From contig NW_002060949.1 in the NCBI RefSeq assembly GCF_000150275.1, positions 5,203,006-5,267,005 of the forward strand: DNA of 64,000 nt. Reading direction: 5' to 3'. The position numbers and the translations under genes are program-made. Below the pieces are notes generated by a model that saw only the letters and a program-made list of their open reading frames with translations, was not told where the DNA came from and did no database searches. Positions 1-64,000 of the stretch are shown in pieces. How positions within the stretch are numbered: the stretch's first letter is position 1; each line of letters begins with the position of its first letter. This stretch comes from Trichoplax adhaerens (Eukaryota; Animalia; Placozoa).

Positions 1-3000
1 AACTGACAACATTATCTAAGATGGATTCCGAAAATGATCAAGTTATTGAGAAACATATAAAAAAAGTTAGACAAGCTAGTACGAGACCTAAGGTAAATTT
101 CAAAAGTGATCAGCCTAAAGAACAGACAAAACTTGATCATGTAGTTACAAAAGTTAGGATGGATACCGAAAGTGATCAGGTCAAGGGAATGCAAACAGCT
201 TCAGATCAAGTTACTGCTAAGTCTAAGGTGAAATCCGGAAATGATCAAGTTAAGAGTAAACAAACAAAATCCGATCATGTAATTGCAAAATCTAAAGTGG
301 AATGCGAAAATGACCAAGTTAAGAAAAAACTGATAAGATCCGATCAAGCGATCACAAAATCGAAAGTGGAATACGAAAATGACCAAGTTAAGAAAAAAAC
401 AGTAAGATCCGATCAAGCAATCATAAAATCTGAAGCCAATATTGACAAGAATCAAGTTAAGAGAAAATTGGTGAAATTTAAAGCGGATTCCGAAAATGAT
501 CAGATTAAGAAAAAACCGGCAAAATCCCAGCAGACAAATATAAAGTCTAAAGCGGAATCTCAAAGCGATCAAGTTCAGATAAAGCATACGAAATCTGATC
601 AAACAATTGCAAAACCTAAAGTAGACTCTAAAAATGATCAAGTTAAGGGAAAATACGCAAAGCAAGATCAAGTAATTACAAAAACTATAACTGATCCTAA
701 AGATAACAGAGTCAAGGGAAAAAAAGATTTACGTGACGGTGGTTAGTCAACTGATATTTTAATTGAATTTTTTAATTCGGTTATGTTATCTGAAATATCC
801 GAGAACTATTTGTGTAACAAATAATTTAGACGTTATCTAATTGTAGGATTTAACTATAAGTTGTTAAAAATGTACACATATCATACATAATAGGGAGGAA
901 ATCTGTGAAAACTACAGGGGAGCTGCATTACGATAGTCCTGTCAGGGAAAACATCTACAAAGCTTTCCGAGATATTTTGTCAAAGGTTGCGGAAAAAATT
1001 GCTATCCAAATGAGTGTCGTCAGTAAACTGTCGAAAGATATCGAGGAACAATTATTTAATTTGTTTAATGACACTGGGTCTCGCTATAAAAACAAGTATA
1101 GAAGTCTATCGTTTAATTTGAAGGACGAAAAAAATAAGGTAATATTCATTCTGAGTACTATTATCACTTTCGCTGTAATACTTATAACATTAAGTAGAAA
1201 AGTAACTCATATTTTTGGTACAGGCTTTGGTCGAGCGGATTTTGCACGGTGATATATCGCCTTCTAAGCTTGTCAGGATGACCTCTGAAGAACTAGCAAA
1301 TAAAGAACTTGCTCAGTGGAGAGAAAAGGAAACCAAAAAAGTATACATGTAGTCATAAAATGTTTATCAGTGATAACTCTACGATATCAGTACTATATAA
1401 TTCCTGTATTTTATGTTATTATTATTTAGAATATTGAGATGATCAAACTGGCACAAACGGAAAATGTTGTTACCGTACTAAAGAAAAATCATAAGGTAGT
1501 TAGATATTATAAAATTTTACTTGTCACCAGTTTTAAATTTAATTATTTTACGTATATGATAGGGGGAATTCGTCGTAAACGATGAGAAATTTGCTCCATC
1601 TGAGGTAAAGGACGATCATTCCGCTATATGCAGTAATATTTTTAGTACGCGGATGATAGTATTGAGGCAACGTAATGGTTACACATTTCGTAGTATACAT
1701 TGACTATCGTACTTCAGCCCAATTGGAGACTGTTGAATATCCCATACTTAAAGTATATTTGCTATTTTAGCCTACAGAGCCGATAAGAGCTTCATCAAAC
1801 AGTGATAGTGACAATAAAATTGATACTACAGTTAATCACGACAAACATGTCTTCGATGTTGACTGCAAGATATGCATCGGTCGGATAAAACCAAAGCATG
1901 AAGTTCGAATTAATACAGTGAAATCAATAGAATCAGATATTTCTGGCCCATCTTTTAGCGACATGTGAGTGATTTCTTAATTAATTAACAGTGAGTACTG
2001 TAGGCACTTTTAATGATACTTCAAAATTATTTAAACGAAACTATAGGAATCTTACAGCCATGACAGAAATAAATCAAGAACATGATGATAATGACGATAA
2101 TGATATCTTCTACAATGATGGCAATGAAGAATATATGAAACTGTTAGTATTATTCAGTAAATTTAACTGCTACTTTTTCACTTGTAATTAGATGATTTAC
2201 TTTTGGCTCACAGTGATAAACTGGCTATGTTAACATTAGTTTATTGTAAGATTGCCGGTTTCATCTTTTTTATTCCTATATCCTCAACAGGGACGGAAGT
2301 GAAGATCAGTCAATACTAAATAGTGATATTGTATGGTCTGGTATGATTTCCATGCCAGGTATCGCAGAGTTTACGGCTTCGGCATACATTGCTCATGGTT
2401 TAAGTGAAGACGTAATAGAGGTAACCACAAAGAAATGGATGATACATTTAATACATATTTATGGTGTAAATTTGCACCTGTAGTAAGCAAATTCTTAAAA
2501 GATACATGGCTATCACACCTCTGAATGTATGTTTATTGCAAATTTCTAGCTATTACCTTCTACTCTGATGGTTCATGGAAGACTATCTCTGGCTACAATG
2601 TGGAACTACTATGAAGAAATCTCTCAGTTGTATTCTAAAGTATTATTTTATATACTTTTCCTAGTTTTATATCTTTGTCATATCTGTTGTGAATGATTTT
2701 AGTGATTTCGAAATATTTTCTTTCTATAGGATATCTTTGTGTTGCGTATAAAAACTATTAACAGCGATGAGCTTGCTGGCTATATTTCATTGCATTCGTA
2801 TCTAAGTACAAAGAGCCGATGTGCAGTTATTGGTAATTGTCCGAAAATTGTAAAGGATATGTACTTAATTCCTGTTACCTCCAATTGTCCGCTACCAGGA
2901 AGTTTTAAAGGACTTCTAGATTCCAGTAAGTTTGATTTTTCATTCTGATGTAATTATCGTTTCATTACATCTTTATAATCTATTAAACTGAATAACGCTA

Positions 3001-3843
3001 ATTTGTAATGTAGGTATATTGCAATGTGAGCGATGTATGCTTGCCATGATCATTAGTCACAAAAGGGATCCTGTACAGAACATATCTACTTCGCCTACTA
3101 ATATCCAGACAAGTAGTAGGGGCATTTCATCAGTAAATGATGATGCTGATGCTGATGCTGATGATGATGATGATGATGATGAACCTTATGATCCAGGTGC
3201 TGCATTACCATATGACGATGAATACGATGAAATGGCTAACAAGGAAAGGGAACTAGACGATGATGAAGTCGCATCCCCACCACCTATCAGTTACCCATCG
3301 GAAGTGAAAATAAATGTACCTAGCGAAATTGAAAGTCAAAGCTCAAATACTTTTGAACTAAATAGGCCAAGTAGTGATAACGAATTACGTAATTTAGGAA
3401 ATGAGTTAATAAACGAACGAAGTTTGCCTAGCCAAGAAGAAATTTGGAATCGCAATGAACAAACAGATTATACAAGTTATGATGAGGGTGGTATGCGTTC
3501 AGATTTTTCAGATAGAGGACGACAATACATGAATGAAGACTTTAGACCTGTTGATAACGAATATCACCATCCTTCCGATCATTATAGTATGATAGATAAC
3601 AACCAATTTAGACCACCTCATCCACAATGGCGAGAATCCTTTGTTCCACATCGGTATCACGATTTTGTGCCTCATCGTGCTGCACAGCATCCTGAATATC
3701 ATGGTGGAAGGATGGGACCTAATTTTCATCCAAATTTCGATCGTCGTCCTCCCTATCCTGAAATGATCGACCGTAATAGATGGCCTAGAGCTATTGCAAC
3801 ATATCATCGGAGGAATCGTGGTGGCAGAGATAGGCGATTTTAA
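1..3843 (+). CDS. PHF3/DIDO1-like TFIIS-M + SPOC domain protein, multi-exon, probably 5' partial
   Basis: Spliced exons (approx. <1-741, 894-1138, 1224-1340, 1430-1495, ~1563-1604, 1771-1964, 2291-2420, 2550-2639, 2730-2925, ~3014-3843) encode a TFIIS central domain (YKNKYRSLSFNLKDEKNK-ALVERILHGDISPSKLVRMTSEELANKELAQWRE), the KNHKGE and DTTVNHDKHVFDVDCKIC motifs, a SPOC domain (VWSGMISMP...GYISLHSYLSTKSRCAVIGN...KDMYLIP) and a low-complexity P/H/R tail. Confidence 0.9.
60..735 (+). repeat. Coding tandem repeat, ~69-bp / 23-aa unit, about 9-10 degenerate copies
   Basis: Units such as SDHVIAKSKVECENDQVKKKLIR / SDQAITKSKVEYENDQVKKKTVR / SDQTIAKPKVDSKNDQVKGKYAK in ORF 21..746. Confidence 0.85.
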
Positions 3844-24254: not shown

Positions 24255-27200
24255 TTAAGTATTTATATGTAGTCGTTTTACACCACATTCGCAGCAAAAT
24301 TTTGCATTTTGAACTGGATATTTTGTACCACATTCGTGACAGAATTTAGGTTTGGCTTGTGAAAGAGCGCTACTAGTCGAAGTATCATAAGTATCTTTAT
24401 TTTGTCGACTTCCATTAAATGTACCTTTCGGAATTGTTCTGTTTTGGCTGAAAGATAAATATCTTTGTTTATTCCTGTTTACTTGAATACCTCCCTTATT
24501 ACTGAAACTATTGTATACGTGTATATCCAAAATAAAAGCGCAAATTGAAACTCCGTCCATACCTGATCTTGCTTGCAGAGTTGCCAGATCTTGAATTTTC
24601 GTCTCCACTAGTTGTACGATGATAACCTTATGAAGATGGATTAAATTAAATTATGAATTGCGATCATCTTAAAATACACTATTTTGAGTACTAAGCCTAA
24701 TGGATATCTACATGCGTGATAAGCTACTTCTACGGATGGAAAATGAAATAGAAATTTATTTTTGAAGAAATGATACAAATACGTAAACATCCACCAGCGT
24801 GCGTTGTATATTCCAGCTCGCACATTAACCACAAAGAAACACTTTATCTACTACGGAAGAATGATAGACTCACCATATGATGGCTTTTTAATACCAGTAG
24901 AAGGAGCTTTTAGCCCGTATGATCCAGTTGACTTTCCTCCTATCGTCATAGTTTTCTTGGAAGGTATCGAACTACTTGCAAATTGATCATGATTCTTAGC
25001 AGATCCGGATGAAGGCTTACGATCAACTTGATCTATATTCGCCCTTGAGGTAAGTGCATTTCTACTCGTAGCAGATATTGGAGTTGACATCTGCTTACTT
25101 GAAGATCCTTTCGGCATAGGTGGTTTATACTAAATTGATTGAAACGAAATATTGAATTGCAAAGAAAAATTTCAACATTATTGGCTTTACGCAATTAGTT
25201 ACCTGAGTCCTCTTATTTAACTGCTGTTTTGCACTATTACGGGGTACTCTTTGAGATTGTTCTTTACAAAATTTAATATGGCGTTCAGCTGAGTCAGGAT
25301 TAAAGCGCCGTTGACAATAAGGGCATTGAACAAGACTAGGATCAATTTTCGATGGGGGTGGAGGCGGTAATGGCTTGCCTTCCTTGACTGCTTGAGTTAC
25401 TTTCCTTGCACTACGAATGGTACTAAGAAAGTCCTCATGTTTTTGTTTCCAGTTTCCTCCCTTTGGTTTATCCTGAATTATTCAGAATACGCGATAGCGA
25501 TACTAACATTATACGATTTCATCTTATGCTGTATCCAAATTTTAGTCTTAAGGTCTAAATATCATTACAAAAATTGCTCTATTTCAAGTGTTATACTTTT
25601 TATTATTAGCTTATAAATAGATAATAATTTGGATTGATCTTGGCTAAACAGTATTAATTATCTTTTAATCGTAGCAACTTGCGCAATTATTGGAAGGTAT
25701 ATAAAATAAGCTCATTCCAGACCACAGGAATGTTAAATCGTGTTTTATTTACTGCTAAATGTATTATTTCAATTCAACCATGCAATTTCACATATCTACT
25801 GTACAGTATAAGCCACTTCGGCAAAGTCTGAAATGATGAAATTCTATCATGGTATAAAATAGATATTGCTATTTACTACCTTCTTATCCGTTTCTTTTAA
25901 AGCTTTCAACGCTTGAGTTTTGTTTATATCCGTTCCAAGCATGCGTTGATTAAAAGAATTAAATACTTTCCTCTTCTTATTGGCAGATTTTTGGCAAATT
26001 TTCTCATGTCGAGCCTAAAAACGTTACGCATTACATTTCTAATTTAGTATGCGCTTGTCAATCTCAAATTTGAATGTCTGTAATATATCGATATGAAGTG
26101 GTTTGTAATGTATACTATTGTAGATTTTCGATAATACATGATTATATCTACTCACCATAAAACTCTACAAATAAAAGTCATACAATCTTTTAACAAATGC
26201 TCATATCATACTAAAATATCGTAAAGCATTATGTATACAATTATTATTCTAGGATAGGGTCGTATGAAGGATAATTAACATTTTACATATATAAAAATTA
26301 TTAAATTGTTATAATATAGTAAGACACAAGGATTAGTTTTCACTGATCAAAATTAGGCTACTTTGTACAATTTCTGTAACTTTTAATAGATAAGACTAAC
26401 TCAGTTTCCTGCTATACCTATCCTAATGCCTTTTCCGTCGATAATAAACTTATCAAATAAAGTGTACCCACACGGCCATAATTTTATTAATAGCTACTTT
26501 AATAAATTCTACCTATTTGCTATTCATTATGCTACGTATCAATAATATTTGATTATAATCAGAACTGTATGAAATGCTTATCTTTCCAATATAACATCTT
26601 ATGAACGGTTGTAGTTATTAAATCTTACTATAGTAAATAAAAAGTAATAGAGATACTACAACCAATAGTAGCGCAAGCTATAAGAAATGTAAGCTCAGAC
26701 TGGGTATCATTTCTGCACTCTAATTTTTACTTAATGGATTGAGTATACTCTGCATAGTAAATAAATTAACCAAATAAAACGAGAGAAGCATAATTCAAAA
26801 GTTGAATCGGTCAAGAAACGGAAGCTAGAATAGTGATTATTCTATCTAATTATTAGTGTGAGTGCGTTACTGGGGCTATTTATTTGAAAACACTTTTTGA
26901 GAATGTATTTGGGTCATTAATGTGAGAAAATTGAGTAACAATGTTATACAGGGGATATAGTATGTGTTTACTACAATCTACTATCATCAAGCAGGTCCAT
27001 CTACGGGTATAGCAACTTATATTTACGCGTGCCGTTTCTTTTACTTACCAAGACATCGGGATTAAAGGTGCGTCCGCAATGACTACAAGGAGCGAATTCA
27101 CTTGGATCGTAATCTGTAACAATCAATTTATGTATTCAAATAATATCAAGGCAATCTTATCATTTCTATTCATATCTCTATCAAAATATGGCCGAACTAG

Positions 27201-51638: not shown

Positions 51639-52941
51639 ATGGCTGCTACTGAAGGCTGTCGTATTGTTAAGAGAATTTGCGATGAAAGCTTTAACCTTTT
51701 CAAATGGCTACATGAAGCAGATATTGGGGTGTATAAGGAGTCACAATATCACCTAGAGCAAACTGAAACGTTGAAGCAGAAATTAGATTCGATCAAAGCT
51801 TTATTTCGAAGTTTGCGCCTAGTCTATGAAGACTGCAATAGGAATGGAAAAATCGATGATCAAGAGGTACACAAGCGGCATGATGAAGTACTATACATGT
51901 CTAAATGATAAAATATTTCGCCTTTCTATACCTTCAAGGTTTAATCTCCAGATTTTTCATTCATTCAGATTAAGGAATTATTATTTAGTGACAACAACGA
52001 GGCCAAATCAACACAACGTGACAGCGATAAAGATGGATTGACAATGGAACGTCAGGAGCTAGAGGAGGTATTACTGTACTCTATGTAATGCCATGTTTTG
52101 GATACTTACATTCTACTTGCAATGTCATAATTTTTATAGCAATGACGGCAGTTTAGAACATTTTTACTACATGATGTATCTTAATATCCTAAAGTAAAAT
52201 ATAATAACTTATGCGTTGACGATTACGTGTTGCTTGAAATTATTACAATTACAACGTCGTTTCACTAGGCAGCCCTCGCAGTGACATTGAATGGATTGTT
52301 ACATGAATAATAATGATACATAATATACGTAATGCGATTGTATCCTAGCGTAATAAGCATAGATACGAAACAGTTTTTCGTTTACGCGATTATAAATCTG
52401 TTGCGTCAGTATAGTTAGAGAACAAATGTCACATACAGTAAAATATCGATGTTCATGTATATAAGTGGCTTGCAGATTAGTAATCGCAGATTCCAAGGAC
52501 GATATGAGCAGTAAAGCGTATAAGATATCGTATAGACTGCAGTATTCTCATGTAGATCGTAATCGTTAAGCATAGATTGTACTGCACACTACGGTATTAT
52601 TACAGTTAGTATTTTACCACGGCATAGACGGTGCAGTATAATAGGAAGATATCATTAACAGAAATGCGCAAATGAAATCGAAATCGTGATGGTGTAGTAC
52701 ATTAAATTTCGTAATCCACGAGTAGTATAGTATTTGCTTTTGTCATGTATCTTCCAGTATCTTCCTGTTACCTTAATGCATTTATTATAGTTGACACTCT
52801 GTCATACATCTTGGTATTTATGTAAACTCATTAACAAATTCTACTTTTTTGCAGCGAATAAAGGAAAAGAATCAGCAATTGAAGATTGTAATAGATCAAT
52901 TAAGGGAAACAGTATGGCAGATCAATGCCTTTACGACCTAA
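51639..52941 (+). CDS. MED30: Mediator complex subunit 30
   Basis: Exons 51639-51866, 51970-~52066 and 52855-52941: LFRSLRLVYEDCN and RIKEKNQQLKIVIDQLRETVWQINA match MED30 (LFRKLRLVYDKCN; KNQQLKQIMDQLRNLIWDINAM). Confidence 0.9.
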
Positions 52942-55064: not shown

Positions 55065-55439
55065 ACTGCTGTGAAGTGGCTAAATTAATATCATCAGCAT
55101 TACTAGTCATTCATGTTATAGTTATGTTATCTACTTTAGCTCAATACGGATGACGGACTAAGTAAACTGTGGTTGTAGATTGGATTTTATGCGATTAATT
55201 TTCTTTAATTCGATCCTCTCTCTATCATTGATAATTCGTATAGCCAAGTTGTCAGGATTTCTGGGATACAAAGGTGTATTTAAAGAAGACGTCCTACTAT
55301 TTTTAACTGTTGTTACAGAAATTGCCCAATTTTATTTTCAATTTTATCTTATTTATTAATTAATTAATTAAAGAACTGTTGCTATAACGATATTCCGTTC
55401 CGTTCCGCTTTCTTCTGGAATTAGTATGGGCGTTTCGAC

Positions 55440-55775
55440 GTACAGTACAAACAAAGCTTCATACTGTATCAACCAGTATCAAGTACTGTACTGTAGAGTA
55501 CTGTACTGTACTGTACAGTACTATCAACTCTGTGGGGTAACAAAATTGGAACGGGTTCAGTACGTAGTACAGTACTGTACTGTACTGTACTGCGACAGCA
55601 GCTGCTTAATACAGTATTTTGTATAGTGAAGTGAACGGTTTCAGATGTACTGTACTGTACATTACAGTACAGTACACTACAGTACAGTTGTACTGTACAT
55701 TATACACTGTACACTGTACAGTACACTGTAAAGCACAGCATACTGTACAGTACAGTGTACAGTACAGTACTGTAG
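55440..55775. repeat. Dense (ACTGT)n/(ACAGT)n pentamer array in the divergent promoter region (coiled-coil gene / RPLP1)
   Basis: For example gtactgtactgtactgtacagtac and tacagtacagtgtacagtacagtactgtag, in mixed orientation. Confidence 0.9.
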
Positions 55776-56204
55776 AATGATCGCGAGAACGATTAGCCTC
55801 CACATTTTTTTGCAGAGTCTCTACTATTTTAAGAGAAAAAAAGGAAGAGAAAATGTCCCTGATTATACTGCACCATAATTTGATAGGAGGACATAATGCG
55901 CCTACAAAGCAGTTTTATGCCCCAGTATTTAAACCCCATACCACGAGGATCTGAGTGTCTGACGGTGACGCCAAAAAGTACAAGAATATACCAAGGAAGT
56001 CCTTGATGCTCTTAGCTATACTGACCTTAGTACTGGATAGTAAGTACTATTGTACCAGTGACGCAGAGTGACTGTACTTGGCCAGCGCACTACTACGTGC
56101 AGCGTGTTGCAAGCTGTCCTAGTACGCAAGCGTAGCATCAGACTCCCAGACTACAAGACAATCGGAAAAATTGGCTCTTTTATATTGCTCCACGCATGTG
56201 ACAA

Positions 56205-56345: not shown

Positions 56346-57252
56346 ATGGCATCAACATCTGAACTAGCGTGTGTATATAGTGCACTTATCTTAAGTGATG
56401 ATGAGGTCGAGATCACGGTAAGGAATTGGTATTTTTTTTCCTTGTCGACTTTGAATAGCCTTGCAGGGATGTCGATTTATACAGTACAGTGTGGCATACA
56501 GTCTGGAATCTTGGATGTGGTAGCTGATTTTGTATTTGAATGTATTGGTATCATTTAGGCGGATAAAATTACAGCATTACTGAAAGCTGCTAAAGTAGAC
56601 TACGAACCTTACTGGCCTAATCTTTTCGCCAAAGCACTCGCTGGTCGTAATATTAAGGATTTGATTACCAATGTCGGTTCCGGCGCTGCCGCAGCACCCG
56701 CTGCCGCTGCAGCTGGAGGTGGCGATGCTACTGATGCTCCTGCAGCAGAGAAGGAAGCTGAGAAGGAAGTAGAAGAAGAAGAATCTGACGATGATATGGG
56801 CTTTGGTAAGTTGATAAGACGCTCACGATGGCGTTAATAGGGTTACTTGTAATTGTACAGAATTTTAGACTACGAGTGCAATATTGCTAGGGGTTGTGTA
56901 GCAGTGAAAGCTGTGATATGATTACCGCCATACTGTACTATAGTTGATAATACACTGTACCCTAATGTACAGTATAGCGCCGTCAGTAGTCGCAGACTTG
57001 CCGAACTATTCAATATGAATAATGTTGATTGATATCCTTATTACTGATAAAATACAGTATGTGAGCATGATATGCAGTACGATTGATTACCCGTACGAAT
57101 ATAGTTAAGGTTAAGATGGACAGTATTTAGTGTCATGAGATTGTTACAATTTCCAAATAGTTACTTTGGTATTAAAACTTACTTTCTTCAATTGTCTTCG
57201 ATTGATTTAACTAATGTCTTATGCATTTGTGTTTTCAGGTTTATTCGATTAA
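56346..57252 (+). CDS. RPLP1: 60S acidic ribosomal protein P1
   Basis: Exons 56346-56417, 56559-56805 and 57239-57252: [51 protein letters not shown]...[15 protein letters not shown]. Confidence 0.98.
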
Positions 57253-57822: not shown

Positions 57823-58077
57823 ATTGACAAATTATGATTACAGTATATTCTCTTCAACTGAAATATACAGTGGCTTGACACCACGTGAACTTTTAATACT
57901 GTATTGTATCATTAGGAGATCAAGAAATGACAAAATTTCCCACATTAATGATTGACAAATTATGATTACAGTATATTATCTTAAATTAAAATATACAGTA
58001 GCGTAACAGCACGTAAACTTTATTACCGTACTATAACACCAGAGATCAAGAAATGATAAAATTTCCCGCACCAATGG
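57823..58077. repeat. Degenerate ~128-bp direct duplication between convergent RPLP1 and GTF3C2
   Basis: attgacaaattatgattacagtatatt at 57823 and 57951; both copies end gagatcaagaaatga.aaaatttccc. Confidence 0.85.
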
Positions 58078-58319
58078 CATGGGCAGTAATATGGAAAAAA
58101 CTTTTTAAGATACAATCGTATATACAGTATTTTTTATGGCAATCATTGATTTGTAGTTGTCCAAGTGATTATGTAGTATGATATTTATAATATAGCTAAT
58201 AAATATAGATATATAGTAAGTTTCGATCTGTTTTACATAACAGTATCGTAGTGAAATAATTTCATTAACACTTACAGTATAATGAATAATACTCTCAAAA
58301 TACATTCAAACAAATATTT

Positions 58320-61300
58320 TCAAGTATTGATATCTCCGAGAGCTGAAATATTGTGAAGACGTACCATACCACTTTTACTACCTGATAGCAACCAAGTATG
58401 ACAGTCGCGATTTGGGTTCCAAGAAACCTGTTAAACGAATCCAATTAAGAATATATAATTATTAGCAATTTTAATGACGTTACGTTTATGCGAAAATGCT
58501 CTAGTAGGAAACAAGAGAGTAATCAGTGTGATTTAATTTCTATGGTATCATAAACTGAGATTACCGCTTGAATAGCTTCATGTAAAGGTTTTTGCGAAGA
58601 CGCTGCTACAGGGTTATATTTAGAAGGTTTTGCTATTGAATAATCGCTTTTTGACCAGGATGTTTTATCCTTAGAAATATAGATTATATTAGTTTAATTT
58701 TATTACGTTTCAGTGCGATTCTCTAACGACTTTGTATGATTAATTTTACGGGCTTTAACATACTAAACCATATTCTTTATAAGTTATTATGTAGTCTTGA
58801 TCATTTGAGACGTTAGATTGGGTATTGTTTTCTATCTTTGATTCATATACGATCTAAGCCAAAATTTGAAAATAACAAATTAACTTTCCGACAAAATGTA
58901 TTTGGTAGTTTCTTCATAAAATAAGTCAACCACAAACTGACCCAGAAATATTTACTTCTTTGATTGAATTTTGTTGATATCGTTCCGCTAGTCAAAACTT
59001 GTGCAGTATTAAAACCGTATAGCTCCCCACACTCACTACCGCTTACGATATTAGTTGACCACTCTGAAAAGCTCTGAGCCTACCAAATGAAGAAGGATTT
59101 AATCTTGTTAGTCACCTAACAACTTATGTTGTTATTGAAGTAACATGTTAAGCTATTAATATAACATTTACTAACCAGGGAAGCGCCGCTATGTTTAATC
59201 AAATTCACAATTTGGGCGTCATTTCGGCTACTAATGTCTGTATAATTGGCGGTTCCGTATCTATTTTAAATTATAAGAAATGAAACCGTATTCTAAACTT
59301 ACTTCTTAAAACAAAAATATGAAAGTACCCAGAAGTAGAATCTTCTTCGGTGAGAAAAAGAAAACGTCGATGACGGGGCCAGACAATACTTGTAAACCAC
59401 CCTTGATAAAAAAATAGATATATTACGAAAGGTATAACAAATAGAGCCTGAGCTGATTTTAAAGGTTATATTGAAACCTTTCTTCCAAGACCGTATCGGC
59501 TTATTTAAATCACTAAAGTCCCATACTTTAATGCATCTGTCGTGTCCAGCTATGGTAAGTAAAAAATACGCGTACATAGGATATAGGAGATTCTGTACTA
59601 TTACATAAGAAATAGTATGTATGAAGATAAATTCATCTTTAAGTACCTGTTGCAAAGTAATCTCCATTCGATGGACACCATGCAATGCTACGGATAACAC
59701 TGTCATGTCCAGCAATAATGCGAAATGGAAAGTAGTCTATTCAATAATAATAATAATTAGATCCTTAAGGTAAACAAAAAAGGATTAAAATACAAGGCCA
59801 TCTTATTGCATAATGTACACGTACATCGAGTCATCTGAGATTCATTAAAATGATTACAAAGCAATAGCCGTGATTCCGTCATCAGATCCCATATTGCGAT
59901 TGTACCTAGGGTTTACATTTATATAGTTTTAATATAACTAAAATTTACGACATATAAAGTTTCAATGAAACTATTCCTATCAAAAATTTTAGTGCGTTAA
60001 CCATCTGCGAAGCCAGCAGCAAGGAAGCGATGTTGATTGCTTGACATCCATGCCAGGCATATTGCTTGGCCACTATTAGTAATGTCATCGTATTTAGGTA
60101 TTAAGATGGCATGTGGAATGATATTAAAGATCACTACATTTTGGTTAAAAAAAATATTTAAAAGGGTCAAACATTTTGATGCTTCTGAAACTTTTCTGCT
60201 GGTGCGGTATAGACTAACCTTCTTTGGTCTTTTGCTGTTGACGGAGACTTGCGGGCTGAGGTACACTGTATTAGGTACATGAATAATAAAAGTTACGTAA
60301 GATTAATGTTATTATCATCGTAATTGATGTATAATACTCGCCTTAATACGCGAACTTTGCCATCCCCACATGCCATTGCTAAAAGTCCAAGTCTGGATGA
60401 CTAGTTTTTAGTTTACAGTAGTATATTAATTCTTAATACCAAATAATATTAGTTTTTTACAAGTTCAGAATTTAACTTAACTTACTAAATCGGATTTTTC
60501 GTAAGTCTGTTGCTGCCAGCACCCCGATGGGCACCATTTCATGTCCCAAATAGGTCCATAGTCGTACGTAATACCGAGGGCTAGATAGGGTACTATTTTG
60601 TCTTGCCTGTAAGAGGTGATAGTAAATTACGTGGAGATTTATCAATTGTTAGAGATATGCATATTTTAATGTGGCACAGACCTTTTCTGTAATTTACCAC
60701 AATTCCAAAGTTGTATAATCCCGCGTGTCGTTTCACATTTGTAAATATTATGAGCCTTACAAGATAAAAACGGTACCACGTTTAAATGAAGCTTAGTTGT
60801 ACAGACGTGTCGATTAATTTATATCGAAGTATAATATTTACACACATGGGTCTGTGCTTTGTTAGTGCTAATCGCAACGTACTGTTCTGTCAGTTCTGCA
60901 TCATCTGTTAGAAACAAGGTTATGAGAAGTCCCTTCAAAAAAGGTATTAATTTAATTTAAATCTACATACCCGGAATAGGGCACCAAGCTACTGTCCAAA
61001 CAGGATCTCCAACAAATAACGCCGCCGAATTTGCTGCATATGCAAAATTAGATAAAACAATTTCATTTAGAATGGAAGTAATCAAAAATTGATTAAAAAA
61101 ATCTCGACATAATTAGGCATAAGATAAACAATCATCTTAAATTACCATCAGAATATACATATTTTGATTCGAATAATTTCAACTTTGTAAGATCCTCCAC
61201 ACATGACCTTTGGCAATTCAATTTGAAATACGGAGATTCTTTAGTGTCCGGAAGAAAGCCTACAAATTCACTATTTCATCGGATCATAAGTATTGATATA

Positions 61301-61675
61301 TCGGAAGTTAATACGTATCCAGTACAAGTTTAAATTTTATAAATTCAAATATTAGCGGAATCTAACTTTTCAGTAAGAGGTCGAACATGATTTGTAGTAG
61401 GTTTCCAGCCAGTAAATGTAATTTGACAATGTGTAGTTTGCCGACTAAAGCAAGAACAGAAGGTATGAGCGGAAGAAAATAAGTGGGTAATAATTACACT
61501 TTTTTCCTAACCTCTCTTTGATCCAATTAACGTTATTGTGAATAAAAGCTCTTAGAGGAAGAGATAATTTCATTGCTTGCTTTAATTTTATTTTACTGGT
61601 ACTCTTTCTCGCACCACTGACCAAGTAACTACTTTTATCACGATCTGAGGCAACATCCATTGCATAATCTGAGTC
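58320..61675 (-). CDS. GTF3C2: TFIIIC110 / general transcription factor 3C polypeptide 2, WD40 region
   Basis: Many short exons: FTGWKPT, FLPDTKESPYF, LFVGDPVWTVAWCPIP, QYVAIS, IIQLWNCGKL, LALGITYDYGPIWDMKWCPSGCW, RLGLLAMACGDGKVRVLSVPQP, CLAWM...FLAAGFADG, AGHDRCIKVWD, VSWNPNRDCHTWLLSGSKSGMVRLH. Stop TGA at 58322-58320. Confidence 0.9.
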
Positions 61676-61762
61676 CTTATGAAATCCCAAATTTTACTGC
61701 GATTATTCTTTAAGTTTAGATTTTAAATCTAAGGTTCTTGTTTATGGTGACGATACTATTAA

Positions 61763-63568
61763 CTTGCCTTATGAACAGTTTTAGAGTGATGCTTTAAGCC
61801 TGCCTCGGATTTGTATGTCATGTCACATTTATTGCATTGAAATCTGATTAAATCCTATACGATTTAAACATAATAACTAGCTGAGGATAGCGTAATTTTT
61901 CATATAATTCACAAAAATGTAGGGCTCATTTGCTTGGTATTAAATATTAAACTATATTCCAGGTTTGATATTTACCGATCCACACTTCTGTAGGTGATAT
62001 TTAAGCCCAGGAATTGTAGTAAAGACCGCGTTACACTCCTAACATCGATACATTGTGTAAAATTACGCTATCAATATTAATCTAAACTCACCGAAGCAGT
62101 TCTAAAATACAAGATTCTTAAATTACAATAATTAAAGCGAACGAGGATTGGAAACCTTATTAAGGCACTTAATAGCACCATTCTTCTTTAAGGCAACGCG
62201 AGCAGTCTTTATCGTGTTTTTATTTAATGCTACATCCTATTCCAGAATTAACAACAAGCAGTATTGAAGATTTCATTTTCTGAGATTTCAAAAATATATC
62301 GTTCGTTCTCAAAATTTTCTTAAATCGCCATAATTTTGAATTCCGTAAAATTGTAAACATGTTTATAGCCCAATGACCGTAGTGTATTAATGCATAATAT
62401 GTATACCTTATTGTTTCCACCTAGCTGGGTACTTTCAATTTCCACTTCATCGTCGTCAGCATTAGCTGTTGAAATTATTAATTCCGCGGCCCTAGCACGT
62501 TCAAAATTTTTCAAAAGCATAAAATGAATACGTGCAATTTAGACTTATTATTACGAAGTGTGATTACCATCTGATTTAGAATCGGATATTACTACAATGT
62601 TATGACGTGTATTTCGACTTGTATACGCATAATATCATCATATATACTATCAATTGATGTCGTATTATTCTTAATTACTTATCTTATAGTGTTATAAATT
62701 GATTAGGTGATATACAGTACATCACAAAAATATTGATCATCGTTCAGTAATCTGAATGGAATTGGTATTACACAGTAAATGACATTTATGTAGAATTGCA
62801 ACGATATTAACATGGCTATTGTTAGGCATAGTTAATATCATCAAGTAGTGATCGTTTACACTACAGCATCAGAAAGACTCGATGGCAGCACTGTAAGACA
62901 AGAGTATACAGGTAGATACATTACATGCCTATTTATGTATTAAATGCAAAATTGACTTGCTTTTACTGCATTTTATCAACTCCAAAGGCAATATCATATA
63001 AAGCATAAAAATATAACCAATAATTATTTGTAATAAAGCATACCTTACAGCAGACTTTCTCTTTTTATTTCCTATAACAACAGCAGAAGATTCTGCTTCT
63101 AAATCTTCTAGTCCGGTTGAGGACTGAAACATTTGCATATTTAAAGAGTTAACGAGAGATTAAGATTAAATGGTAAAATTGACAAATTAATTTGTTAATT
63201 TATAAAAACGACAATAAAGGTATTTCGACAAATCCACTGTACCTTATCAGTGCCATGAGAAACCTTCAGATGATACTGTAAACCGGCTTCTGAGGTATAG
63301 GTTTTATCACATAGTGTACATGTAATGATAGGTTTCTCCTAAATTAAAAAATTATTTTGTTGTTAATTTTTACGATTTTATATCAAGTATAAAATTGTTA
63401 TTGAGAGCTGATACAGTAATGTAAGTAATGACTTCATACCTGACCACAACGTTGCTGATGATAAATGTATCCACTAACTGTCTTGAAAAGAATAGAACAT
63501 TTCGGACATTCCAATTTTTTATTTTTTTTTAGTTGATCTTGCAACGATTTTCGATCCAAACTGATACT
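61763..63568 (-). CDS. ZNF512/ZNF512B-type paired CCHC+C2H2 zinc-finger exons (5' partial), apparently the N-terminal part of the GTF3C2 gene
   Basis: QLKKNKKLECPKCSILFKTVSGYIYHQQRCGQ-EKPIITCTLCDKTYTSEAGLQYHLKVSH...KRKSAVR...LKKNGAIKCLNK-ECNAVFTTIPGLKYHLQKCGS-DLIRFQCNKCDMTYKSEAGLKHHSKTVH. Confidence 0.8.
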
Positions 63569-64000
63569 CTAGTGAATTTAATTATGTCTGCAATTAATAG
63601 TTATTCCTTATTGTATTCCGATTAGCTTTATGCTATTCATTCTGACAATCAATTGTAATGAAATTTGCAAATAAGTTATAGAAACTATCAATGGGTTGTA
63701 TAGCATCTAAATCCGATTTCGTATGTACGTGAGGCACATTCTTAGATTATAATAGCTCAAAATGATTGATATATTCCATACTCTAATGGGTAATGACCTG
63801 CCAACGGAAAATAATGTACGCAGCGGTACTATGAAACTTCTCTTAATTTTCTACGTTTGCTGCTAACAGCGATGGAAATTATGTAACACGAAGTAACGTT
63901 GAAGTTACGTATAATAACTCGTTATATCTATCATAATTGTAACGTACAATCAATATCTCGTGAACGTTATATAAATCAAGTAGATCTTTCTGAAGTGATT

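What the first reader, a model, noticed from the sequence alone, without database searches (positions are those of the whole stretch)
58320..63568. Apparent in-frame fusion of ZNF512-type zinc-finger pairs to TFIIIC110 (GTF3C2)
Seen: minus-strand exons encode two widely spaced CCHC+C2H2 finger pairs. They end (...HHSKTVHK) only ~90 nt upstream of the first exon running into the GTF3C2 region. Two splice solutions keep the frame: GC donor 61767 to AAG acceptor 61676 (phase 0), or GT donor 61763 to a CAG acceptor at ~61669 (phase 1). The gap leaves little room for a 3'UTR plus promoter, and lacks the ACAGT array seen before other genes here. Known: the GYxYHQxRCG...CxxCxKTYxSxAGxxYH pattern is characteristic of ZNF512/ZNF512B, chromatin proteins linked to repeat heterochromatin and NuRD. 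Human and yeast TFIIIC110/Tfc6 lack such fingers, and human ZNF512 and GTF3C2 are separate genes in the same band (2p23.3). Inference: one ancestral polypeptide may have coupled the Pol III/insulator factor to a repeat-reading finger array and later split; alternatively this is a lineage-specific fusion.
Basis: partly seen in the sequence, partly recalled or inferred. Interest (0 to 1): 0.85.

Follow-up and report, generated by a model that had tools for sequence, protein, structure and literature searches.

The report
Zinc-fingered TFIIIC110 gene of Trichoplax
In the placozoan Trichoplax, RNA shows that the ZNF512-type zinc fingers and the RNA polymerase III factor TFIIIC110 (GTF3C2) are one gene and one reading frame. 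Invertebrates from insects to amphioxus have the same build, so the separate vertebrate genes ZNF512 and GTF3C2 look like the halves of an old single protein.

Summary
Transcript contigs from three independent studies run from the finger exons into the GTF3C2 exons. This intron removes the TAA and keeps the frame.

My 26-exon model reproduces the longest contig to the base (2656 nt). It gives 794 codons in the window, and about 856 with four inferred 5' exons beyond the window end. The public annotation of Trichoplax adhaerens (TRIADDRAFT_58397, 512 aa, "uncharacterized") starts at the internal ATG at 61660 and misses exons.

The C-terminal part matches GTF3C2 exon by exon and is single-copy. 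The N-terminal part holds two C2HC+C2H2 pairs, and their best Pfam family is ZNF512_C2HC.

The fusion is not lineage-specific. Every named non-vertebrate animal GTF3C2 homologue retrieved with an N-terminal region carries such pairs (amphioxus, Ciona, octopod, annelid, two insects). None of about 18 vertebrate ones does. The amphioxus fingers hit only ZNF512 and ZNF512B among solved zinc fingers.

Best reading: this is an ancestral animal TFIIIC110 with a ZNF512-type DNA-binding module, and the two parts became separate genes in vertebrates. No paper was found describing this.

The parts
63440..63568 (-). First exon inside the window (129 nt, phase 0). It encodes C2HC finger 1 (CPKC...YHQQRCG).
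   Evidence: Covered by contigs X7, X9 and X14. Best Pfam family is PF21276 ZNF512_C2HC, E 2.2e-4. 44% identical to amphioxus P0023 residues 363-403. Top hit of the finger-pair profile, E 1.3e-6.
63243..63338 (-). Exon 2 (96 nt). It encodes the classical C2H2 finger that completes pair 1.
   Evidence: Pfam zf-met and zf-C2H2, E 8e-6 and 3e-5. Collinear with P0023 residues 407-434. Finger-pair profile E 4.5e-6.
63044..63123 (-). Exon 3 (80 nt). Linker with a basic KKRK patch.
   Evidence: Exon lengths B-E sum to 342 nt, which equals contig positions 547-888.
62407..62491 (-). Exon 4 (85 nt). Acidic linker.
   Evidence: canonical GT-AG borders.
62156..62236 (-). Exon 5 (81 nt). Its end carries the first Cys of the second C2HC finger (KCLNK|EC).
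   Evidence: Joint 62037->62155 in three runs. It splices exon 5 directly to exon 6.
61976..62038 (-). Exon 6 (63 nt). The rest of C2HC finger 3 (Cx4C type, ...YHLQKCG).
   Evidence: PF21276, E 2e-4, is the best Pfam family. This is the only PF21276 match reported in the six-frame scan of the whole genome.
61768..61854 (-). Exon 7 (87 nt). C2H2 finger 4, ending ...HHSKTVHK.
   Evidence: Pfam zf-C2H2, E 2.9e-5. 52% identical to P0023 residues 411-437. Joints.
61676..61767 (-). Junction intron, 92 nt, GC-AG (AAG|GCAAGT ... CATAAG|G), phase 0. It contains the TAA at 61761-61759 that would end a finger-only protein.
   Evidence: Joint 61674->61767 in X7, X9 and X14, with no unspliced contig there. 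Borders shown. No ACAGT/ACTGT pentamer.
61512..61675 (-). Exon 8 (164 nt). Linker. It holds the internal ATG at 61660 that the public model TRIADDRAFT_58397 uses as its start.
   Evidence: No Pfam match.
61367..61444 (-). Exon 9 (78 nt). Missing from the public model.
   Evidence: Joints 61270->61367 and 61444->61512. Absent from P0001.
61146..61270 (-). Exon 10 (125 nt). GTF3C2 homology starts here, weakly.
   Evidence: GTF3C2 profile positions 162-196, E 0.19.
58565..61033 (-). Exons 11-25, the GTF3C2 WD40 propeller region: 61033-60971, 60904-60846, 60755-60682, 60606-60486, 60400-60342, 60265-60219, 60133-60002, 59905-59825, 59736-59647, 59549-59478, 59401-59329, 59260-59176, 59079-58942, 58853-58764, 58669-58565.
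   Evidence: Joints and model. Collinear profile matches for exons 11-20 and 23, best 1e-15 for exon 14. Exon 14 matches human GTF3C2 residues 473-497, E 1.2e-6. Exon 17 matches residues 564-589. One further GC-AG intron at 60341..60266.
58320..58427 (-). Coding part of the last exon (exon 26), with the TGA stop at 58322-58320. Last WD40 blade.
   Evidence: GTF3C2 profile positions 630-660, E 5.7e-10. Translation.
58050..58319 (-). 3' untranslated region. The contigs run on below 58050.
   Evidence: X14 record 1 and X9 record 18 cover 58050-58425 and continue.

Best explanation
Region 58320-63568 is most of one Trichoplax adhaerens gene, not two.

What it encodes: the only TFIIIC110 (GTF3C2, the tau-B subunit of the RNA polymerase III factor TFIIIC) in this genome. 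Its N-terminal third carries two ZNF512-type finger pairs, each an atypical C2HC finger followed by a classical C2H2 finger. Its C-terminal two thirds are the GTF3C2 WD40 propeller.

Shown:
- a single spliced mRNA;
- an open frame of 794 codons in the window;
- the identity of both halves;
- the same architecture in several other animal phyla.

Inferred:
- Transcription starts about 2.9 kb beyond the window end, next to an ACAGT-rich stretch. Four small 5' exons add 62 codons, giving about 856 aa.
- By analogy with human TFIIIC, the propeller pairs with TFIIIC90, holds a winged-helix domain of TFIIIC220 and touches DNA just downstream of the B-box. The finger pairs, on a flexible linker of about 100-140 residues, add DNA contacts beside tRNA genes or at TFIIIC-only sites.
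- This is the ancestral animal build. In the vertebrate stem the finger module and the propeller became separate genes: ZNF512 and ZNF512B on one side, GTF3C2 on the other. Human ZNF512 and GTF3C2 still lie within 417 kb.
For: RNA
- Contigs from X7, X9 and X14 (three studies, two organism labels) span the fingers and GTF3C2, joined by the GC-AG joint 61767..61676. No unspliced contig is present there.
- The exon model sums to 2656 nt, exactly the X14 contig span between its anchors.
- All introns are GT-AG or GC-AG.

GTF3C2 half
- PDB hits.
- Named homologues at 2e-47.
- Collinear exon-by-exon profile hits.
- Single locus in the genome.

Finger half
- PF21276 is the best Pfam family for both C2HC exons.
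- It is the only such locus reported genome-wide.
- tblastn matches to amphioxus fingers.
- Finger-pair profile test.

Other taxa
- Amphioxus P0023, P0024 and P0037 pass Pfam's cut-off for PF21276 (30.9-45.4 bits), with the fingers N-terminal of the WD40 region.
- C2HC+C2H2 pairs are also present in the Ciona, Argonauta, Paralvinella, Thrips and Lycorma homologues and in two unnamed ones. They are absent from about 18 vertebrate homologues and 2 fungal ones.
- Against the PDB, P0023 hits human GTF3C2 (2e-77). Among zinc fingers it hits only ZNF512B (2gqj, 2e-8) and ZNF512 (2ctd, 3e-6).
- Its finger region's four nearest Atlas clusters are all named 'Zinc finger protein 512'.

Literature
- ZNF512B is built of C2HC+C2H2 pairs (PMC11602157).
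- Human GTF3C2 and ZNF512 share a 417-kb interval (PMC2570409).
- Role of the TFIIIC110 propeller (PMC11811891).

Promoter
- No ACAGT repeat lies in the gap. An ACAGT-rich stretch sits where the contig's 5' end falls by arithmetic.
Against: - The RNA evidence is assembled contigs, not raw reads. Contigs drop rare forms, so a minor finger-only mRNA (ending at the TAA) or a GTF3C2-only mRNA from an internal start cannot be excluded. No isoform ratio can be given.
- There is no protein-level evidence.
- The 5' exons and the start codon lie outside the window. They rest on a loose-end match, fitting frames and length arithmetic only.
- On single Trichoplax exons PF21276 scores 21 bits, below Pfam's cut-off of 27.
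- The other animals' proteins are gene predictions.
- Cnidarians, sponges, ctenophores and echinoderms were not sampled. The Saccoglossus model is N-terminally short.
- It was not shown that invertebrates lack a stand-alone ZNF512 gene.
Confidence: 0.85

Rival explanations
1. These are two separate genes, a ZNF512-like gene ending at the TAA and GTF3C2 starting at ATG 61660. The spliced joint is a read-through or conjoined by-product.
For: The public annotation starts a 512-aa protein at ATG 61660. An in-frame TAA follows the last finger exon if the intron is kept. Contigs cannot show minor isoforms or transcript ends.
Against: Three studies show only the spliced form, and no contig covers the 92-nt gap, although X7 holds intron-retaining contigs elsewhere. 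The gap has no room for a 3' UTR plus a promoter and no ACAGT repeat. The same fused build is predicted in at least six other animal lineages. The public model is plainly faulty: it lacks exons 9, 20 and 24 and reads into introns.
Confidence: 0.07
2. The fusion is real but arose only in placozoans.
For: Human and fungal GTF3C2 relatives lack the fingers.
Against: Finger pairs sit N-terminal of the GTF3C2 propeller in amphioxus (above the Pfam cut-off), Ciona, Argonauta, Paralvinella, Thrips and Lycorma. They share the layout of a Cx2C pair followed by a Cx4C pair.
Confidence: 0.03
3. The joint is an artefact: template switching by reverse transcriptase, or mis-assembly at the 9-nt direct repeat TTCATAAGG.
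For: A 9-nt repeat flanks the skipped stretch, which is the classic signature of template switching.
Against: The same joint appears in three studies at the full depth of the contig. One placement gives a textbook GC donor (AAG|GCAAGT) and an AG acceptor. The gene has a second GC-AG intron. The joint keeps the frame, and the architecture is conserved elsewhere.
Confidence: 0.02
4. The fused gene is ancestral, but vertebrate ZNF512/ZNF512B do not descend from it by fission. They would come from an older stand-alone finger gene or a partial duplicate, and vertebrate GTF3C2 simply lost its fingers.
For: Only similarity and loose linkage support fission. Human ZNF512 and GTF3C2 are separated by 10 genes. 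Invertebrate stand-alone ZNF512 genes were not excluded, because the search was limited by length.
Against: No other PF21276 locus was reported in Trichoplax. ZNF512B conservation is described among vertebrates only. Among solved zinc fingers the amphioxus fingers match only ZNF512 and ZNF512B.
Confidence: 0.2

Closest known systems
Human GTF3C2 (TFIIIC110; PDB 8CLI chain C) and its yeast counterparts Tfc6 / Sfc6
   Same: Homologous WD40 propeller, collinear over exons 11-26. [quoted passage not shown]
   Different: The vertebrate proteins retrieved have no C2HC+C2H2 pairs. The Trichoplax protein has two pairs in its N-terminal ~200 residues. From my own knowledge, not tested here: the fungal proteins carry other small N-terminal DNA-binding elements such as AT-hooks. 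An AT-hook was seen here in the Lycorma homologue.
Human ZNF512 and ZNF512B (PDB 2CTD, 2GQJ; Pfam PF21276)
   Same: The defining unit is shared: an atypical C2HC finger followed by a classical C2H2 finger, in widely spaced pairs (PMC11602157). PF21276 is the best Pfam family for both Trichoplax C2HC exons.
   Different: ZNF512 and ZNF512B are stand-alone finger proteins (ZNF512B has four pairs) without a propeller. ZNF512B has an internal NuRD-binding motif RK(x)xxPxK/R, which is absent from the Trichoplax in-window model. They are reported to bind satellite repeats and recruit SUV39H (PMC13537249). Nothing of that is known for the fused protein.
Amphioxus 'GTF3C2' (P0023 Branchiostoma lanceolatum, 1494 aa; P0024, P0037)
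   Same: Same order: ZNF512-type pairs first, then the GTF3C2 propeller. Trichoplax pair 1 aligns with P0023 residues 363-434 at 43-44% identity.
   Different: Amphioxus has three pairs and long extra regions (1107-1561 aa against about 856 aa). It is a database prediction, with no discussion found in the papers searched.
TRIADDRAFT_58397 (XP_002114505.1, B3S1Z9), the public model of this locus
   Same: Same locus, same reading frame from ATG 61660 onward.
   Different: Truncated and faulty. It has no finger exons, lacks exons 9, 20 and 24, translates intron sequence and has a wrong C-terminus. It is named 'uncharacterized protein'.

Membership tests
GTF3C2 / TFIIIC110 | C-terminal WD40 propeller specifically homologous to GTF3C2 rather than to generic WD40 proteins | tested here: met
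   Exon 14 hits only human GTF3C2 in the PDB (E 1.2e-6). P0001 matches GTF3C2-like proteins at 2e-47. A profile made without Trichoplax matches 12 exons in order.
GTF3C2 / TFIIIC110 | The orthologue in its genome (single copy) | tested here: met
   The six-frame search of the whole genome with P0001 finds only this locus.
GTF3C2 / TFIIIC110 | Assembles with TFIIIC90 and TFIIIC220 into tau-B and supports Pol III transcription | not testable with these tools
   Known for the human protein (PMC11811891). Inferred here.
ZNF512 / ZNF512B | Pairs of an atypical C2HC finger followed by a classical C2H2 finger | tested here: met
   Two pairs are read directly from the spliced exons. The family definition is from PMC11602157. 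Aligned with other GTF3C2-borne pairs.
ZNF512 / ZNF512B | Match to Pfam PF21276 (ZNF512_C2HC) above the curated cut-off of 27 bits | tested here: inconclusive
   Scores of 21.2 and 21.4 bits on single exons. It is the best family for both, but below the cut-off. The second finger is split by an intron and the joined protein was not searched. The amphioxus counterparts pass at 30.9-45.4 bits.
ZNF512 / ZNF512B | Stand-alone finger protein without other domains | tested here: not met
   The fingers are spliced in frame to the GTF3C2 propeller. The gene should therefore be filed as GTF3C2 carrying a ZNF512-type module, not as a ZNF512 orthologue.
ZNF512 / ZNF512B | Internal NuRD interaction motif RK(x)xxPxK/R (ZNF512B) | tested here: not met
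   No match in the 794 in-window residues. Motif taken from PMC11602157.
ZNF512 / ZNF512B | Binds satellite or repeat DNA and recruits SUV39H | not testable with these tools
   Reported for the human proteins (PMC13537249).

The most novel reading that the evidence does not exclude
The vertebrate heterochromatin factors ZNF512 and ZNF512B are the detached N-terminal DNA-binding module of the ancestral animal TFIIIC110. The fused invertebrate gene would then act as a 'Rosetta stone', predicting that ZNF512-family proteins still act with TFIIIC at tRNA genes, tRNA-derived repeats or TFIIIC-only boundary sites.
Probability: 0.35. Interest if true: 0.8.

Novelty: new variant of a known kind. Interest (0 to 1): 0.66.

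Why it matters
TFIIIC is both the factor that recruits Pol III to tRNA genes and a genome organiser at repeat and boundary sites. ZNF512 and ZNF512B have recently emerged as repeat-binding factors linked to heterochromatin and NuRD, and their origin is unexplained.

A conserved invertebrate gene that joins the two gives several things:
- a correct model for a mis-annotated core transcription factor in a key early-branching animal;
- a dated gene-split hypothesis, after the tunicate-vertebrate divergence;
- a directly testable prediction of a functional link between ZNF512-family proteins and TFIIIC in human cells.

No paper in the searched library makes this link.

Tried and rejected
- A candidate 10-nt exon (AACTGCTTCG) between exons 5 and 6 is skipped by the real joint.
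- Single-exon PDB searches were not diagnostic. Exon 1 gave ZNF512B at E 0.16 and ZNF512 at 1.2 among generic fingers. Exon 7 gave generic C2H2 hits, with ZNF512B in 7th place. Exon 10 gave no GTF3C2 hit. Exon 19 gave generic WD40 hits.
- The Atlas search with exon 1 alone returned only generic short zinc-finger clusters.
- The search of the 1.84-billion library with exon 8 found only the public Trichoplax model.
- The region search with the amphioxus fingers found only amphioxus proteins and one ordinary C2H2 protein. It did not reach vertebrate ZNF512B and does not test for stand-alone invertebrate ZNF512.
- Two exhaustive exon-chain scripts timed out. Exon ends were then set by hand and checked against contig lengths.
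- There is no NuRD motif in the model.
- CTACAGTA is enriched beyond the window end but scattered, so it did not locate a start site by itself.
- The joined, spliced protein was never sent to a search tool. Exons were searched one by one by reference. The join was made only inside scripts, to check frame and length.

Full report
**Where and what.** The window is G000 contig C1408:5203006-5267005 of a 105.6-Mb genome. An exact protein match identifies the organism as Trichoplax adhaerens. All features of the finding lie on the minus strand.

**The observation.** These are the two finger pairs, the ...HHSKTVHK end, the GC at 61767-61766, the GT at 61763-61762, the TAA at 61761-61759, the AAG ending at 61676, the CAG at 61671-61669 and the ATG at 61660.

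**RNA evidence.**
- One search found 19 public runs that hold the stretch. Three hold nearly all of it and are presumably DNA. Many hold about a quarter to a third of it, which is the exon share.
- I laid four runs from four studies on 58050-64000. In X7 (recorded as RNA-Seq), X9 and X14, single contigs run from the first finger exon (63569) to beyond 58050. The X14 contig is 3444 nt long.
- They show a joint 61674->61767 that skips 92 nt.
- TTCATAAGG occurs on both sides, so the cut can be placed in ten ways. Only one placement has canonical ends: a GC-AG intron at 61767..61676 with donor AAG|GCAAGT. It is in phase 0 and removes the TAA.
- The gene has a second GC-AG intron (60341..60266), so GC donors are used here.
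- The depth in bin 61632-61830 equals contig depth times the exonic fraction (107/199) in all three runs. No other contig covers the gap. X7 does contain intron-retaining contigs for other introns, for example 59522-59676.
- X4 gave only short unspliced pieces. One of them ends exactly at 61675.
- The limit is that these are contigs, so minor isoforms and true transcript ends cannot be seen.

**Gene model.**
- From the listed joints and hand-set borders I built 26 exons, from 63568 to 58320.
- Their summed length between the contig anchors is 2656 nt, exactly the span of X14 record positions 416-3071.
- All introns are GT-AG apart from the two GC-AG ones.
- The frame is open for 794 codons and ends at the TGA at 58322-58320.

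**Upstream of the window (inferred).**
- The contigs continue 415 nt upstream of 63569 with sequence that is not in 63570-64000. I fetched the next 9 kb.
- The loose end matches a 19-nt micro-exon at window-equivalent 64489-64471 and an exon ending at 64825.
- Two further exons (66211-66121 and 66272-66236, the latter with an ATG) fit in frame and have canonical sites. Together these give 856 codons.
- By length arithmetic the contig would begin near 66501, at the edge of an ACAGT/ACTGT-rich stretch (66500-67300).
- The 92-nt gap has no such pentamer.
- Earlier notes of this scan say these arrays are the published Trichoplax promoter repeat.

**Public annotation.** Exon 8 finds one protein in 1.84 billion: TRIADDRAFT_58397 (XP_002114505.1, B3S1Z9), 512 aa, 'uncharacterized'. 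It starts at ATG 61660. Compared with the RNA-supported model, it lacks exons 9, 20 and 24, translates intron sequence and has a wrong C-terminus.

**The C-terminal half is GTF3C2.**
- Exon 14 hits only human GTF3C2 (8CLI chain C, residues 473-497, E 1.2e-6).
- Exon 17 has GTF3C2 as its top hit.
- P0001 matches GTF3C2-like proteins of Saccoglossus (2e-47) and Ciona.
- A profile of seven homologues without the Trichoplax row matches exons 10-20, 23 and 26 in strict order, with a best E of 1e-15.
- The genome has no second copy.

**The N-terminal part is ZNF512-type.**
- PF21276 (ZNF512_C2HC) is the best Pfam family for exon 1 (E 2.2e-4) and for exon 6 (E 2e-4). Both score below the 27-bit cut-off as single exons.
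- Exons 2 and 7 are classical C2H2 fingers.
- A whole-genome six-frame scan for PF21276 reports only this locus.
- The published definition of ZNF512B is pairs of one atypical C2HC finger followed by one C2H2 finger (PMC11602157). That is what is seen here, twice.
- The NuRD motif of ZNF512B is absent.

**Other animals.**
- A profile search of the GTF3C2 family returned amphioxus proteins that carry both PF21276 and WD40.
- Pfam scans place the fingers N-terminal of the propeller (for example P0023: 410-585 against 850-1040). PF21276 is above its cut-off, at 30.9-45.4 bits.
- Motif and profile scans find one to three C2HC+C2H2 pairs in all named non-vertebrate homologues that have an N-terminal region. 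These are three amphioxus proteins, Ciona, Argonauta, Paralvinella, Thrips and Lycorma, plus two unnamed sequences.
- No pairs are found in about 18 vertebrate proteins (including a hagfish model) or in two fungal ones.
- Thrips, Lycorma, one unnamed protein and Trichoplax share the order of a Cx2C pair followed by a Cx4C pair.
- tblastn aligns amphioxus residues 363-403 and 407-434 with Trichoplax exons 1 and 2 at 43-44% identity.
- A profile of the foreign pairs ranks exons 1, 2, 7 and 6 first among 3338 six-frame peptides.
- Amphioxus P0023 hits human GTF3C2 (2e-77) in the PDB. Among all solved zinc fingers it hits only ZNF512B (2e-8) and ZNF512 (3e-6).
- Its finger region's four nearest named Atlas clusters are all 'Zinc finger protein 512'.

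**Interpretation.**
- Shown: one gene, one mRNA and one frame. Both halves are identified, and the architecture is shared across Placozoa, protostomes, cephalochordates and tunicates.
- Inferred by parsimony: the fused form is ancestral at least to the placozoan-bilaterian ancestor. The separate state arose in the vertebrate stem, after the split from tunicates.
- Human GTF3C2 and ZNF512 lie in one 417-kb interval with ten genes between them (PMC2570409).
[quoted passage not shown] The tethered finger pairs would add DNA contacts nearby.
- Human ZNF512 and ZNF512B bind repeats and recruit SUV39H (PMC13537249). Whether that activity existed in the fused ancestor is unknown.

**Novelty.** The architecture sits unremarked in databases: amphioxus 'GTF3C2' carries PF21276. 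Four literature searches found no paper linking ZNF512 with TFIIIC or GTF3C2 beyond shared human GWAS intervals.

**Limits of procedure.**
- The joined protein was never sent to a search tool. Exons were searched singly by reference.

Noticed in passing
window 61768-61776 and 61676-61684 (minus strand): The junction intron is flanked by a 9-nt direct repeat, TTCATAAGG: the exon 7 end plus the first intron base, and the intron end plus the first base of exon 8. Part of it is splice consensus. The rest (TTCATA) may be chance or a trace of how the intron arose.
   Followed up: partly
L002:1471-1489 (window-equivalent 64471-64489), outside the window: A 19-nt micro-exon (AAAACAAGAAAAAAACACG) lies between two long introns. 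It is supported by the loose ends of three contigs.
   Followed up: partly
window 55400-55850, and L002:3500-4300 (window-equivalent 66500-67300): Dense ACAGT/ACTGT pentamer arrays, with up to 13 per 150 nt at 55600. The first lies upstream of a plus-strand gene with ORFs at 56346-56837 that look like an acidic ribosomal stalk protein (an alanine-rich stretch followed by a ...[10 protein letters not shown]... motif). The second lies where the fused gene's transcript seems to start.
   Followed up: partly
window 62461, 63340, 63439 (run X7 only): Loose ends join plus-strand sequence to minus-sense exon 1/2 junction sequence. This is a strand-switch chimera, most likely a library or assembly artefact.
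   Followed up: no
window 52212-52381 and 25128-25481 (minus strand): Weak matches (E 0.04-0.5) to the finger-pair profile. They may be other zinc-finger genes in the window.
   Followed up: no
window 58050 and below: The X14 contig runs on 373 nt beyond 58050. Either the 3' UTR is over 600 nt long or the contig merges with a neighbouring transcript.
   Followed up: no
P0029 residues 155-166 (Lycorma GTF3C2 homologue): An AT-hook lies upstream of the finger pairs. This suggests that N-terminal accessory DNA-binding elements on this subunit vary between lineages.
   Followed up: no
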